Shown: positions 16,699-18,318 of the stretch, one piece after another
How positions within the stretch are numbered: the stretch's first letter is position 1
How the letters are laid out: each line of letters starts with the position of its first letter
From: Macrostomum lignano
Taxonomy: Eukaryota
DNA length: 64,000 nt
NCBI GenBank assembly: GCA_002269645.1
Contig: NIVC01000455.1
Span: 372,001-436,000 of the forward strand
Direction of reading: 5' to 3'
Notes under the pieces: generated by a model
Seen by the model: only the letters and a program-made list of their open reading frames with translations
What the model was told of the DNA's origin: nothing
Database searches by the model: none
Position numbers and translations under genes: made by a program

Positions 16699-18318
16699 AG
16701 ACCTGCACCGGAGCGGTTACGAAAATTAGATTTCTCGGTAGTTGCTCGCACTCTTTTGCACTACTTGAGTAGTCTGATTTTCGAACGGCAGGCTGGTTCC
16801 AGCAGGTAGTTCCTCTGGATAAAAGCGCTTACCGCGCCCATTGGCTTTCCAGCTGCCTTAATCGTTTCCGGTGATCTTGTGTGCGTGCTTTCAGCTTGAT
16901 TGGCTGCGGCAAGCAAGCTCGAAAGAGCTCGCTTCGCTCGCTCTTTCTCGCTATCTACCATCTATTGCCAGGACCTGCACCGGAGCGGTTACGAAAATTA
17001 GATTTCTCGGTAGTTGCTCGCACTCTTTTGCACTACTTGAGTAGTCTGATTTTCGAACGGCAGGCTGGTTCCAGCAGGTAGTTCCTCTGGATAAAAGCGC
17101 TTACCGCGCCCATTGGCTTTCCAGCTGCCTTAATCGTTTCCGGTGATCTTGTGTGCGTGCTTTCAGCTTGATTGGCTGCGGCAAGCAAGCTCGAAAGAGC
17201 TCGCTTCGCTCGCTCTTTCTCGCTATCTACCATCTATTGCCAGGACCTGCACCGGAGCGGTTACGAAAATTAGATTTCTCGGTAGTTGCTCGCACTCTTT
17301 TGCACTACTTGAGTAGTCTGATTTTCGAACGGCAGGCTGGTTCCAGCAGGTAGTTCCTCTGGATAAAAGCGCTTACCGCGCCCATTGGCTTTCCAGCTGC
17401 CTTAATCGTTTCCGGTGATCTTGTGTGCGTGCTTTCAGCTTGATTGGCTGCGGCAAGCAAGCTCGAAAGAGCTCGCTTCGCTCGCTCTTTCTCGCTATCT
17501 ACCATCTATTGCCAGGACCTGCACCGGAGCGGTTACGAAAATTAGATTTCTCGGTAGTTGCTCGCACTCTTTTGCACTACTTGAGTAGTCTGATTTTCGA
17601 ACGGCAGGCTGGTTCCAGCAGGTAGTTCCTCTGGATAAAAGCGCTTACCGCGCCCATTGGCTTTCCAGCTGCCTTAATCGTTTCCGGTGATCTTGTGTGC
17701 GTGCTTTCAGCTTGATTGGCTGCGGCAAGCAAGCTCGAAAGAGCTCGCTTCGCTCGCTCTTTCTCGCTATCTACCATCTATTGCCAGGACCTGCACCGGA
17801 GCGGTTACGAAAATTAGATTTCTCGGTAGTTGCTCGCACTCTTTTGCACTACTTGAGTAGTCTGATTTTCGAACGGCAGGCTGGTTCCAGCAGGTAGTTC
17901 CTCTGGATAAAAGCGCTTACCGCGCCCATTGGCTTTCCAGCTGCCTTAATCGTTTCCGGTGATCTTGTGTGCGTGCTTTCAGCTTGATTGGCTGCGGCAA
18001 GCAAGCTCGAAAGAGCTCGCTTCGCTCGCTCTTTCTCGCTATCTACCATCTATTGCCAGGACCTGCACCGGAGCGGTTACGAAAATTAGATTTCTCGGTA
18101 GTTGCTCGCACTCTTTTGCACTACTTGAGTAGTCTGATTTTCGAACGGCAGGCTGGTTCCAGCAGGTAGTTCCTCTGGATAAAAGCGCTTACCGCGCCCA
18201 TTGGCTTTCCAGCTGCCTTAATCGTTTCCGGTGATCTTGTGTGCGTGCTTTCAGCTTGATTGGCTGCGGCAAGCAAGCTCGAAAGAGCTCGCTTCGCTCG
18301 CTCTTTCTCGCTATCTAC
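16699..18318 (+). repeat. Tandem array of six apparently identical 272-bp units (unclassified, foldable)
   Basis: ACCTGC recurs at 16701, 16973 and onward with period 272; last unit lacks the CATCTATTGCCA linker and runs into TATC. Confidence 0.97.

What the first reader, a model, noticed from the sequence alone, without database searches (positions are those of the whole stretch)
16699..18318. 272-nt tandem unit folds into a compact multi-helix RNA with no recognisable ribozyme core
Seen in unit 1: P1 16706-16718/16860-16873 (13 bp, 1 bulge) closes a three-way junction with P2 16720-16730/16773-16783 (11 bp, extended by CTCGGTAGTTGC/GCACTACTTGAG) and P3 16787-16796/16849-16857 (9 bp, 1 bulge). 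The 3' part has mutually exclusive hairpins, AGCTC-GAAA-GAGCT (16916-16929) versus GAAAGAGC/GCTCTTTC (16921-16928/16940-16947). The linker TATCTACCATCTATT is TATC-like. Size and tandem form match animal non-LTR retrozymes, but no CTGANGA core exists on either strand. Inference: it may be a retrozyme-like or circular RNA processed by an unrecognised ribozyme, or by none.
Basis: partly seen in the sequence, partly recalled or inferred. Interest (0 to 1): 0.75.

Follow-up and report, generated by a model that had tools for sequence, protein, structure and literature searches.

The report
Ribozyme-less tandem partner of a Penelope retroelement
The 272-base tandem repeat is real and does fold unusually well, but it is most likely a short parasitic retroelement of the flatworm Macrostomum lignano that borrows the copying machinery of a neighbouring Penelope-like retrotransposon, not a carrier of an undiscovered ribozyme.

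Summary
There are six head-to-tail 272-nt units at 16700-18318; five are 100% identical. No hammerhead core and no Rfam family matches the unit.

The window is Macrostomum lignano contig NIVC01000455.1. Bases 1-21635 are one (TATC)n tract holding same-strand insertions: a 5'-truncated Penelope-like element (PLE), five copies of a 1.4-kb non-coding derivative ('A'), and this array. The PLE and every A copy carry a minimal PLE-type hammerhead. The nearest is predicted to cut 87 nt upstream of the array.

The 272 unit shares three things with them:
- An 11-mer, GTGCGTGSTTT, found nowhere else in the window.
- The 5' end AGGACC and the junction octamer CCAGGACC.
- A 3' end, TATCT, fused to the microsatellite.

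The array begins exactly where a 5'-truncated A copy ends, the classic PLE partial-tandem layout.

Best reading: a hammerhead-less, non-autonomous PLE partner arrayed by template jumping or local duplication. The fold favours the sense strand only with RNA parameters, and about 1% of control windows fold as well. No homologue was reachable, so covariation could not be tested. A novel ribozyme is unsupported but not excluded.

The parts
16700..18318 (+). Tandem array of the 272-nt unit: five identical full units plus a sixth that ends at unit position about 259 inside (CTAT)n
   Evidence: TRF; unit-by-unit comparison
16706..16873 (+). 5' domain of unit 1, a three-way junction closed by P1 (16706-16719/16859-16873), with P2 (16720-16745/16758-16783) and P3 (16787-16796/16849-16857), plus P3a (16798-16806/16812-16819)
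   Evidence: RNAfold MFE and centroid. This domain alone gives z = -6.8 on + and -4.7 on -, but it was delimited after seeing the fold
16881..16891 (+). GTGCGTGCTTT, the 3' motif shared only with the PLE 3'UTR and the A elements. It is followed by a small hairpin, 16892-16896/16902-16906
   Evidence: 12 hits in the window, all on the + strand and all in these three families; 0.01 expected. 15/16 match to the PLE 3'UTR
16916..16952 (+). 3' hairpin region of unit 1 with two mutually exclusive foldings (AGCTC-GAAA-GAGCT versus GAAAGAGC/GCTCTTTC)
   Evidence: Sequence reading; MFE
16952..16975 (+). Unit-to-unit junction: 3' end TATCT (16952-16956), 13-nt filler ACCATCTATTGCC (16957-16969), then the 5' end AGGACC of the next unit (16970-16975). 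All five junctions are identical
   Evidence: Junction listing; CCAGGACC occurs only at A-A and 272-272 junctions
15603..16699 (+). Element A copy 5. It is 5'-truncated inside its internal 255-nt array, and its 3' end (…GAATATCTA) abuts the first 272 unit with no microsatellite between them
   Evidence: Self-BLAST; junctions
16568..16623 (+). Minimal PLE-type hammerhead of A5: helix I 16568-16581/16613-16623, core CTGACGA 16582-16588, helix II 16590-16604, GAAA 16605-16608, UAUC 16609-16612. Predicted cleavage is after C16612, 87 nt before the array
   Evidence: Pattern search, 6 hits against 0.55 expected; fold; alignment with one compensatory pair; criteria taken from PMC4209133
16409..16518 (+). 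Promoter-like stretch in the 3' part of A5: CCAAT at 16409 and 16420, and a TATATATATA run at 16507-16518, about 65 nt upstream of the hammerhead core. A TATA-like run at similar spacing precedes the hammerhead in the PLE 3'UTR and in L001
   Evidence: Sequence reading. Promoter function is inferred
7344..11689 (+). Elements A1 (7344-8703), A2 (8710-10323) and A3 (10330-11689), head to tail with an identical 6-nt filler GTACCC. Each has a hammerhead core (8587, 10207, 11573)
12734..14089 (+). Element A4 with a hammerhead core at 13973. Together with its flanking microsatellite it is a segmental duplicate of the A1/A3 region
2006..3258 (+). 5'-truncated Penelope-like element: the C-terminal part of the RT, a CX4CX2C linker and a GIY-YIG endonuclease in an open frame to 3013, then a 3'UTR with a hammerhead core at 3159-3185 and the shared motif at 3236. 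Its 3' end is fused to (TATC)n
   Evidence: Pfam GIY-YIG; translation; relatives with RVT_1, HTH_animal and GIY-YIG domains
18319..21635 (+). (CTAT)n microsatellite following the array. It is part of one (TATC)n tract, 1-21635, that hosts all the insertions (other blocks 1-2005, 3259-7343, 11690-12733, 14090-15602)
   Evidence: TRF; junctions

Best explanation
**What it is.** The 272-nt unit is a short, non-coding, hammerhead-less retroelement that depends on a resident Penelope-like element (PLE) of Macrostomum lignano. It belongs with two other things lodged in the same (TATC)n tract: a 5'-truncated PLE, and a 1.4-kb non-autonomous derivative ('A') that still carries the PLE's minimal hammerhead.

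**Shown.** All three families:
- lie on the same strand;
- end in TATCT fused to the microsatellite;
- contain the private motif GTGCGTGSTTT near the 3' end.

A and the 272 unit both begin with AGGACC. Both form head-to-tail tandems through a short filler that ends in CC. The array starts at the very base after a 5'-truncated A copy.

**Inferred mechanism.**
1. The + strand is transcribed, plausibly from the CCAAT/TATA stretch in the 3' part of A5, which lies where a PLE pseudo-LTR would lie.
2. The PLE reverse transcriptase/GIY-YIG endonuclease nicks the (TATC)n target.
3. The RNA's UAUCUA anneals to the nicked repeat and primes reverse transcription.
4. At the RNA 5' end (AGGACC) the enzyme jumps to the 3' end of another template. 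A jump to another 272 RNA gives the homotandem. A final jump to an A RNA gives the truncated A5 in front.

Local DNA-level duplication may have added units, since the copies are identical.

**Role of the fold.** On this reading the compact fold of the sense RNA is a property of a parasitic template, for stability or enzyme recruitment. It is not a catalytic core.
For: **Organism and neighbouring PLE.**
- The window is 100% identical to M. lignano contig NIVC01000455.1.
- PLE fragment: GIY-YIG, an open frame of 332 codons, and relatives carrying RVT_1, HTH_animal and GIY-YIG domains, the best at 71% identity.

**Hammerheads next door.**
- The pattern CTGANGA-helix II-CGAAA is found 6 times against 0.55 expected. 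All hits are in the PLE 3'UTR or the A copies.
- They have the extra nucleotide after the core, the G10.1-C11.1 pair and a palindromic 15.2-16.2 (UA or AU). These are the criteria of PMC4209133.
- The motif is conserved in the relative L001, and helix II shows one compensatory change.

**Links from the 272 unit to that family.**
- GTGCGTGSTTT: 12 hits, all on + and only in the three families; 0.01 expected.
- CCAGGACC: 7 hits, only at A-A and 272-272 junctions; 0.76 expected.
- Junction anatomy, and the exact A5/272 abutment with no microsatellite between.
- A5 and the PLE fragment are 5'-truncated with intact 3' ends, the signature of target-primed reverse transcription. PLE insertions are typically a truncated copy followed directly by another copy, with short extra tails and a bias for microsatellites (PMC8557442).
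- The relative L001 also ends in a microsatellite, a different one, (CTCTGT)n.

**Sense-strand fold.** RNA z = -4.55 on + against -2.78 on -. There are 7 G.U pairs and no A.C mismatch on +, against 1 G.U in the - strand MFE.
Against: - Only one locus is known. I could not search the rest of the M. lignano genome, and 54 kb sampled elsewhere holds no copy of the unit, of A or of the PLE. Mobility of the 272 unit is therefore inferred, not shown.
- Five units are 100% identical, including a filler that looks like decayed microsatellite. That fits plain unequal crossing-over as well as it fits template jumping.
- No full-length PLE is in the window, so it is not shown that the autonomous element also starts with AGGACC.
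- Overall similarity between the unit and the 3' part of A is not significant. The link rests on short terminal motifs.
- The fold is matched by about 1% of control windows and is strand-symmetric with DNA parameters.
- There is no transcript evidence.
Confidence: 0.58

Rival explanations
1. Local satellite. A single fragment, whether a PLE-type insertion or a captured sequence, became lodged in the (TATC)n tract. It was then amplified six-fold by unequal crossing-over or replication slippage between microsatellite-like flanks. The inverted repeats are incidental and there is no RNA function or ongoing mobility.
For: - The units are 100% identical, and the inter-unit filler TATCTACCATCTATT looks like decayed (TATC)n.
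- Segmental duplication is already evident in the same tract: 6297-8703 matches 11685-14089 at 96.6% identity.
- The fold is strand-symmetric with DNA parameters, and about 1% of control windows fold as well.
Against: - It does not explain why the array starts exactly at the 3' end of A5 with no microsatellite between them.
- It does not explain why the first unit lacks the filler while carrying the same AG(G)ACC start as A.
- The shared motif and junction octamer still point to a PLE-type origin for the unit itself.
Confidence: 0.2
2. The unit is a retrozyme-like element whose multimeric transcript is cut to monomers, and perhaps circularised, by a ribozyme of an unrecognised class formed by the multi-helix fold.
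For: - The size, tandem form and highly self-paired sense-strand fold resemble animal retrozyme RNAs (PMC7229834).
- The unit sits in a hammerhead-bearing PLE neighbourhood.
- The 5' end is sharply defined at AGGACC in two independent junction types.
Against: - No Rfam ribozyme matches even at E <= 10, and there is no hammerhead even with a relaxed core.
- No conserved unpaired core can be identified from a single sequence.
- Hammerhead-less PLE clades proliferate well without any ribozyme (PMC8557442), so none is needed to explain the array.
- My home-made HDV-like descriptor was uninformative.
Confidence: 0.06
3. Helentron/HINE-type DNA element. Each unit is a non-autonomous rolling-circle transposon. 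P1 would be its subterminal inverted repeats and the 3' hairpin its terminator palindrome. The tandem array would come from read-through replication.
For: - A 14-bp inverted repeat starts 6 nt from the 5' end, and a palindrome lies 10-36 nt from the TATCT end.
- HINEs often carry microsatellites and tandem repeats (PMC4067079).
- Both strands are equally stable as DNA.
Against: - The 3' arm of P1 lies 84-98 nt from the end, against 38-60 nt in HINEs.
- The target is (TATC)n, not TT.
- There is no Rep/helicase ORF of 150 aa or more in the window.
- The unit shares its termini and a private motif with a hammerhead-bearing element and a PLE 3'UTR, both of which have 5'-truncated copies typical of reverse transcription.
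Confidence: 0.07

Closest known systems
Animal non-LTR retrozymes (tandem 170-400-nt repeats with a type I hammerhead, expressed as circRNAs; PMC7229834; bioRxiv 10.64898/2026.07.22.740005)
   Same: - Unit size and head-to-tail tandem form.
- A highly self-paired sense RNA.
- Co-residence with PLEs, and sequence ties to a PLE terminal region.
   Different: - No hammerhead and no other known ribozyme in the unit.
- GC content is 51%, against the typical value below 45%.
- Circular RNA has not been tested.
- The ties to the PLE are short terminal motifs, not whole-pLTR homology.
PLE pseudo-LTR / partial-tandem insertions and minimal PLE hammerheads (PMC4209133; PMC8557442)
   Same: - A 5'-truncated copy is followed directly by another unit.
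- Short extra filler at junctions.
- Insertion into a microsatellite.
- The neighbouring A and PLE sequences carry a textbook minimal hammerhead.
   Different: - Here the downstream partner of the truncated copy is a different, 272-nt, ORF-less and hammerhead-less element, repeated six times.
- The fillers are 6 and 13 nt, against the 30-40-bp tails reported.
SINE/LINE partnerships through a shared 3' tail (established knowledge of stringent-type LINEs)
   Same: A short non-coding element shares only the 3'-terminal recognition region, and its target, with an autonomous retroelement.
   Different: - The partner is a PLE, with a GIY-YIG endonuclease and a TERT-like reverse transcriptase.
- There is no pol III head: no tRNA, 5S or 7SL match.
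- The organisation is tandem rather than dispersed at the one locus seen.
Helentron-associated interspersed elements (HINE/DINE-1; PMC4067079, PMC7492417)
   Same: - A subterminal inverted repeat and a 3' palindrome.
- Association with a microsatellite and with tandem repeats.
   Different: - The microsatellite is the target, outside the element.
- No TT insertion site.
- Termini are shared with a retroelement.
- The neighbouring copies are 5'-truncated.

Membership tests
Animal non-LTR retrozyme | Head-to-tail tandem repeats of about 150-450 nt | tested here: met
   272 nt x 6.0
Animal non-LTR retrozyme | A type I hammerhead ribozyme in each unit | tested here: not met
   No CTGANGA on either strand, even with one mismatch plus a helix II/GAAA check. 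No Rfam hammerhead hit at E <= 10
Animal non-LTR retrozyme | Co-occurrence with, and sequence relation to, PLE terminal regions | tested here: met
   A PLE fragment lies in the same tract. The shared 11-mer and termini are exclusive to the PLE, A and the unit. Overall alignment is not significant
Animal non-LTR retrozyme | Expression as unit-length linear and circular RNA | not testable with these tools
   No transcriptome access
Minimal PLE-type hammerhead (applies to the neighbours A and PLE, not to the unit) | [quoted passage not shown] | tested here: met
   A has CUGACGA-A-GGCCC…GGGCC-GAAA-UA-UC. The PLE has …GACC…GGUC-GAAA-AU-UC. See; criteria from PMC4209133. Rfam models miss it. Self-cleavage was not tested
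Non-autonomous partner of a PLE (working definition) | No ORF; shares 3'-terminal sequence, target and orientation with an autonomous PLE; 5'-truncated or partial-tandem insertion architecture | tested here: met
   The longest ORF is 68 codons. Multi-locus dispersal was not testable
Helentron / HINE | 12-15-bp subterminal inverted repeats 2-4 nt from the 5' end and 38-60 nt from the 3' end | tested here: inconclusive
   P1 is a 14-bp inverted repeat 6 nt from the 5' end, but its 3' arm is 84-98 nt from the end (PMC4067079)
Helentron / HINE | Insertion in TT or T-rich sites, and a cognate Rep/helicase element | tested here: not met
   The flanks are (TATC)n. There is no large Rep/helicase ORF in the window. 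The rest of the genome was not searched
Any Rfam family (known ribozymes, snRNA, SINE heads, miRNA) | A covariance-model match | tested here: not met
   0 hits at gathering score in the whole window. Only hits with E > 1 in 16100-17600. No tRNA-like gene

The most novel reading that the evidence does not exclude
The 272-nt sense RNA is a retrozyme-like element that is processed to unit length, and possibly circularised, by a self-cleaving motif of a class not yet described. It would have replaced the hammerhead that its neighbour A still carries.
Probability: 0.05. Interest if true: 0.85.

Novelty: new variant of a known kind. Interest (0 to 1): 0.4.

Why it matters
What the hammerhead does in Penelope-like elements and animal retrozymes is still an open question. 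This locus places two non-coding partners of one PLE side by side in a laboratory flatworm. One has the minimal hammerhead and one lacks it. Both share the same ends, the same target and the same tandem habit.

If genome-wide data confirm the relationship, the pair becomes a natural experiment. It would show whether the ribozyme is needed for transcription, processing, circularisation or mobilisation. It would also point to a short 3' motif (GTGCGTGSTTT plus a hairpin) and a 5' end (AGGACC) as candidate recognition signals for a PLE reverse transcriptase. If the relationship is not confirmed, the array is an ordinary local satellite.

Tried and rejected
**Searches for homologues of the unit. 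All failed.**
- Exact look-up of the unit's ORFs, and of ORFs in A.
- Metagenome scan with the 66-aa minus-strand ORF and with a 23-mer.
- Protein search with all six-frame peptides of the unit concatenated.
- A 25-mer against prokaryotic genome contigs.
- A hammerhead-family pattern against genome and viral contigs.
- Two other M. lignano loci, 54 kb in total, hold no copy of the unit, of A or of the PLE, no hammerhead core and no long TATC run.

**Other dead ends.**
- L003 turned out to be the window itself, so it gave no independent allele.
- More distant PLE relatives, L006 and L007, were uninformative.
- I considered whether P2 is a decayed hammerhead helix I, because TTTTCGAAC is shared with A just after its cleavage site. 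Smith-Waterman scores against shuffles were not significant, so I rejected this.
- A home-made HDV-like descriptor hit dozens of times in shuffled sequence, so I dropped it.
- Trans-cleavage of the unit by A's hammerhead: by reading the sequence, no NUH site has matching arms.
- Spliced-leader, telomerase or snRNA identity: there are no Rfam hits, and from memory no SL or template sequence is present.
- The reverse complement of unit positions 5-75 resembles part of A's 255-nt repeat, scoring above all 300 shuffles. Both are rich in ACT/AGT, so I treat this as weak.
- Evaluating the mirrored structure's energy on the opposite strand gave an impossible value, because non-canonical pairs are not penalised. 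I discarded it.
- The repeat finder on the microsatellite-rich region produced only microsatellite families.
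Full report
**1.

Tandem Repeats Finder reports a 272-nt period, 6.0 copies, 99% matches and no indels at 16700-18325. Units 1-5 are identical base for base. Unit 6 matches through position 259 and then merges into (CTAT)n.

RNAfold of unit 1 gives -103.3 kcal/mol, z = -4.55, with none of 200 dinucleotide shuffles as stable.
- P1 16706-16719/16859-16873
- P2 16720-16745/16758-16783
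- P3 16787-16796/16849-16857
- the two mutually exclusive 3' hairpins

The unit has no CTGANGA on either strand, even with one mismatch allowed. Rfam finds nothing at gathering score in the whole window and only noise with E > 1 in 16100-17600. ARAGORN finds no tRNA-like gene.

**2. How exceptional is the fold?**

The minus strand folds less well: -91.7 kcal/mol, z = -2.78. The plus-strand structure uses 7 G.U pairs and has no A.C mismatch. The minus-strand structure has one G.U pair. This favours the plus strand as an RNA.

Two things temper that:
- With DNA parameters the strands are equivalent: -52.0, z = -4.41, against -51.8, z = -3.99.
- Among 90 control 272-nt windows from 21.7-63.7 kb of the same window, z reaches -4.16 and 5% are at or below -3.36.

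So the fold is real and well beyond shuffles. It is built from inverted repeats of a kind that about 1% of this repeat-rich sequence also shows. In effect, P1 and P2 together form a 38-bp interrupted palindrome, with the P3 domain inserted in its 3' arm.

**3. Where the window comes from**

A single-exon 14-3-3 ORF (25481-26161, minus strand) is 100% identical to Macrostomum lignano BOX15_Mlig012117g1. The DNA fetched around that gene is identical to window 14877-36155. The window is therefore M. lignano assembly GCA_002269645.1, contig NIVC01000455.1.

**4.

Bases 1-21635 are one (TATC)n tract interrupted by insertions, all on the plus strand.

(a) *A 5'-truncated Penelope-like element, 2006-3258.*
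- It has an open frame of 332 codons ending at 3013, with a CX4CX2C linker and a GIY-YIG endonuclease.
- Its relatives carry RVT_1, HTH_animal and GIY-YIG domains. The best is 71% identical, from a JGI metagenome.
- Its 3'UTR ends in TATCT, fused to the microsatellite.

(b) *Five copies of a 1.36-1.62-kb non-coding element, 'A'.*
- Each consists of a 162-nt 5' part, an internal 255-nt array and a 510-nt 3' part.
- A1-A3 (7344-11689) are head to tail through an identical 6-nt filler, GTACCC.
- A4 is at 12734-14089.
- A5 (15603-16699) is 5'-truncated inside its 255-nt array.
- The 3' part of A aligns with the PLE 3'UTR.

(c) *The 272-nt array.* It starts at the base after A5's last base.

**5. 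Hammerheads next door**

The pattern CTGANGA-N8-28-CGAAA occurs six times against 0.55 expected. One hit is in the PLE 3'UTR (3159) and one is in each A copy (8587, 10207, 11573, 13973, 16582).

The motif reads CUGACGA-A-GGCCC…GGGCC-GAAA-UA-UC in A, and …GACC…GGUC-GAAA-AU-UC in the PLE. It has:
- an extra nucleotide after the core;
- a G10.1-C11.1 pair;
- no helix III, but a palindromic 15.2-16.2;
- a helix I that RNAfold recovers.

These are the criteria Cervera and de la Peña gave for minimal, dimer-acting PLE hammerheads (PMC4209133). The relative L001 has the same motif, followed about 55 nt later by a different microsatellite, (CTCTGT)n. Helix II is paired in all three sequences, with one compensatory G-C to A-U change. 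Three sequences are too few for statistics.

Predicted cleavage in A5 is after C16612, 87 nt upstream of the array. Rfam's models miss this minimal form. Self-cleavage was not tested.

**6. Links between the 272 unit and that family**

- GTGCGTGSTTT occurs 12 times in the window, always on the plus strand. It is found only in the PLE 3'UTR, the five A copies and the six units; 0.01 hits are expected. The match to the PLE extends to 15 of 16 bases. In A and in the unit, a small hairpin follows the motif.
- CCAGGACC occurs seven times, only at the A-to-A and 272-to-272 junctions; 0.76 hits are expected.

The junctions read as follows:

| Junction | Sequence |
|---|---|
| microsatellite to A | TATCT / AGGACCGGAC |
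| A to A | TATCT-GTACCC-AGGACCGGAC |
| A5 to first unit | TATCT / AG-ACCTGCACCGGAG |
| unit to unit | TATCT-ACCATCTATTGCC-AGGACCTGCACCGGAG |
| last unit to microsatellite | GCTATCTAC / TATC… |

Both elements therefore share a 5' end, a 3' end, an orientation, a target and a tandem habit with a short filler ending in CC. Apart from these pieces, the unit is not significantly similar to A.

**7. Interpretation**

PLE insertions are characteristically 5'-truncated. They are arranged as a truncated copy followed directly by another copy (the pseudo-LTR), have short extra tails at junctions and often lie in microsatellites. Whole PLE clades lack hammerheads yet proliferate (PMC8557442). Animal retrozymes are now regarded as non-autonomous derivatives of PLE terminal regions (bioRxiv 10.64898/2026.07.22.740005).

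The locus fits a heterologous partial tandem, formed as follows:
1. Reverse transcription is primed where the RNA's UAUCUA anneals to the nicked (TATC)n.
2. Several 272-nt templates, or one multimeric template, are copied.
3. The enzyme jumps to an A RNA.
4. Synthesis stops early, leaving the truncated A5 in front.

This accounts for the exact A5/272 abutment. Two independent insertions into a tract of several hundred TATC repeats would rarely produce it.

The 3' part of A5 carries two CCAAT boxes and a TATA run about 65 nt upstream of the hammerhead. Similar TATA-like runs precede the hammerhead in the PLE 3'UTR and in L001. The array therefore sits where a PLE body would be transcribed from a pseudo-LTR. 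That promoter role is an inference.

**8. What remains open**

- I could not reach any other copy of the unit. Mobility, copy number and covariation are untested.
- The identical units and the microsatellite-like filler fit DNA-level unequal exchange as well as they fit template jumping.
- The Helentron/HINE alternative has a superficial match: a subterminal inverted repeat and a 3' palindrome (PMC4067079). It fails on target site and on the retroelement ties.
- Nothing supports a novel ribozyme, but sequence alone cannot exclude one.

**9. Verdict**

The unit is retrozyme-like in its setting and form, but it has no ribozyme and there is no evidence that it needs one. It is best filed as a new, hammerhead-less variant of the non-autonomous PLE-partner kind, with moderate confidence.

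Noticed in passing
window 7344-16699 (A1-A5); hammerhead cores at 8587, 10207, 11573, 13973, 16582: A 1.36-1.62-kb non-coding PLE derivative with a minimal dimer-type hammerhead, an internal 255-nt tandem array and head-to-tail copies 99.2-99.9% identical. In effect it is an oversized retrozyme-like element that Rfam does not detect.
   Followed up: partly
window 2006-3258: A 5'-truncated Penelope-like element whose RT C-terminus/GIY-YIG frame is still open and which has a CX4CX2C (Neptune/Nematis-type) linker. Its closest relatives are unannotated metagenome contigs, and one is a contig mis-binned into a 'Kangiellaceae' MAG (P0002/L002).
   Followed up: partly
window 1-21635: About 14 kb of (TATC)n in one tract hosts all the insertions. 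The 3' ends of the PLE, A and the unit all read TATCT, and the relative L001 ends in a different microsatellite. This raises the question of whether the TERT-related RT extends or seeds the repeat by reiterative copying. Not tested.
   Followed up: no
window 6297-8703 vs 11685-14089; 10330-12734 vs 12734-15142: Segmental duplications of about 2.4 kb that include both microsatellite and A elements, at 96.6% identity. DNA-level duplication is therefore active in the tract.
   Followed up: no
window 16840-16844 and 16899-16903 (each unit): Two inverted CCAAT boxes that fit the NF-Y consensus on the minus strand (AGCCAATGG, AGCCAATCA), 58 nt apart. On that strand a TTTTAT run follows. The geometry is promoter-like, antisense to the PLE orientation.
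   Followed up: no
window 24448-24475 (minus strand): A 28-nt stretch 86% identical to unit positions 186-213, around the ATTGGCTG box (blastn E = 0.001). It lies about 1 kb from the 14-3-3 exon.
   Followed up: no
window 7528-7597 vs unit positions 5-75 (reverse complement): Weak inverted similarity between A's 255-nt repeat and the P1/P2 region of the unit. The score exceeds all 300 shuffles, but both sequences are rich in ACT/AGT.
   Followed up: partly
window 25481-26161 (-), 25028-25453: A 14-3-3 epsilon-like exon, with a 52-nt x 7.4 tandem repeat immediately 3' of it.
   Followed up: no
window 35834-36826 (+), 36893-37002: An ORF with a C-terminal C3HC4 RING finger (Pfam E = 1.6e-8), followed by a perfect (GACACCAGAG)11 repeat.
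   Followed up: no
window 40858-61250: A large field of 30-nt minisatellite (ACTGGGGGAATTGCTGAGATGTCAAGGCTT) and 22-nt repeats, with repeating blocks of about 5.2 kb (for example 45751 and 50983, 47821 and 52826) and conserved flanks (TCTAAATATACTAAATCTCTAA…). This is possibly another family of repeat-carrying mobile elements.
   Followed up: no
window 62198-62242: An interstitial (TTAGGG) run of about 7.7 repeats.
   Followed up: no
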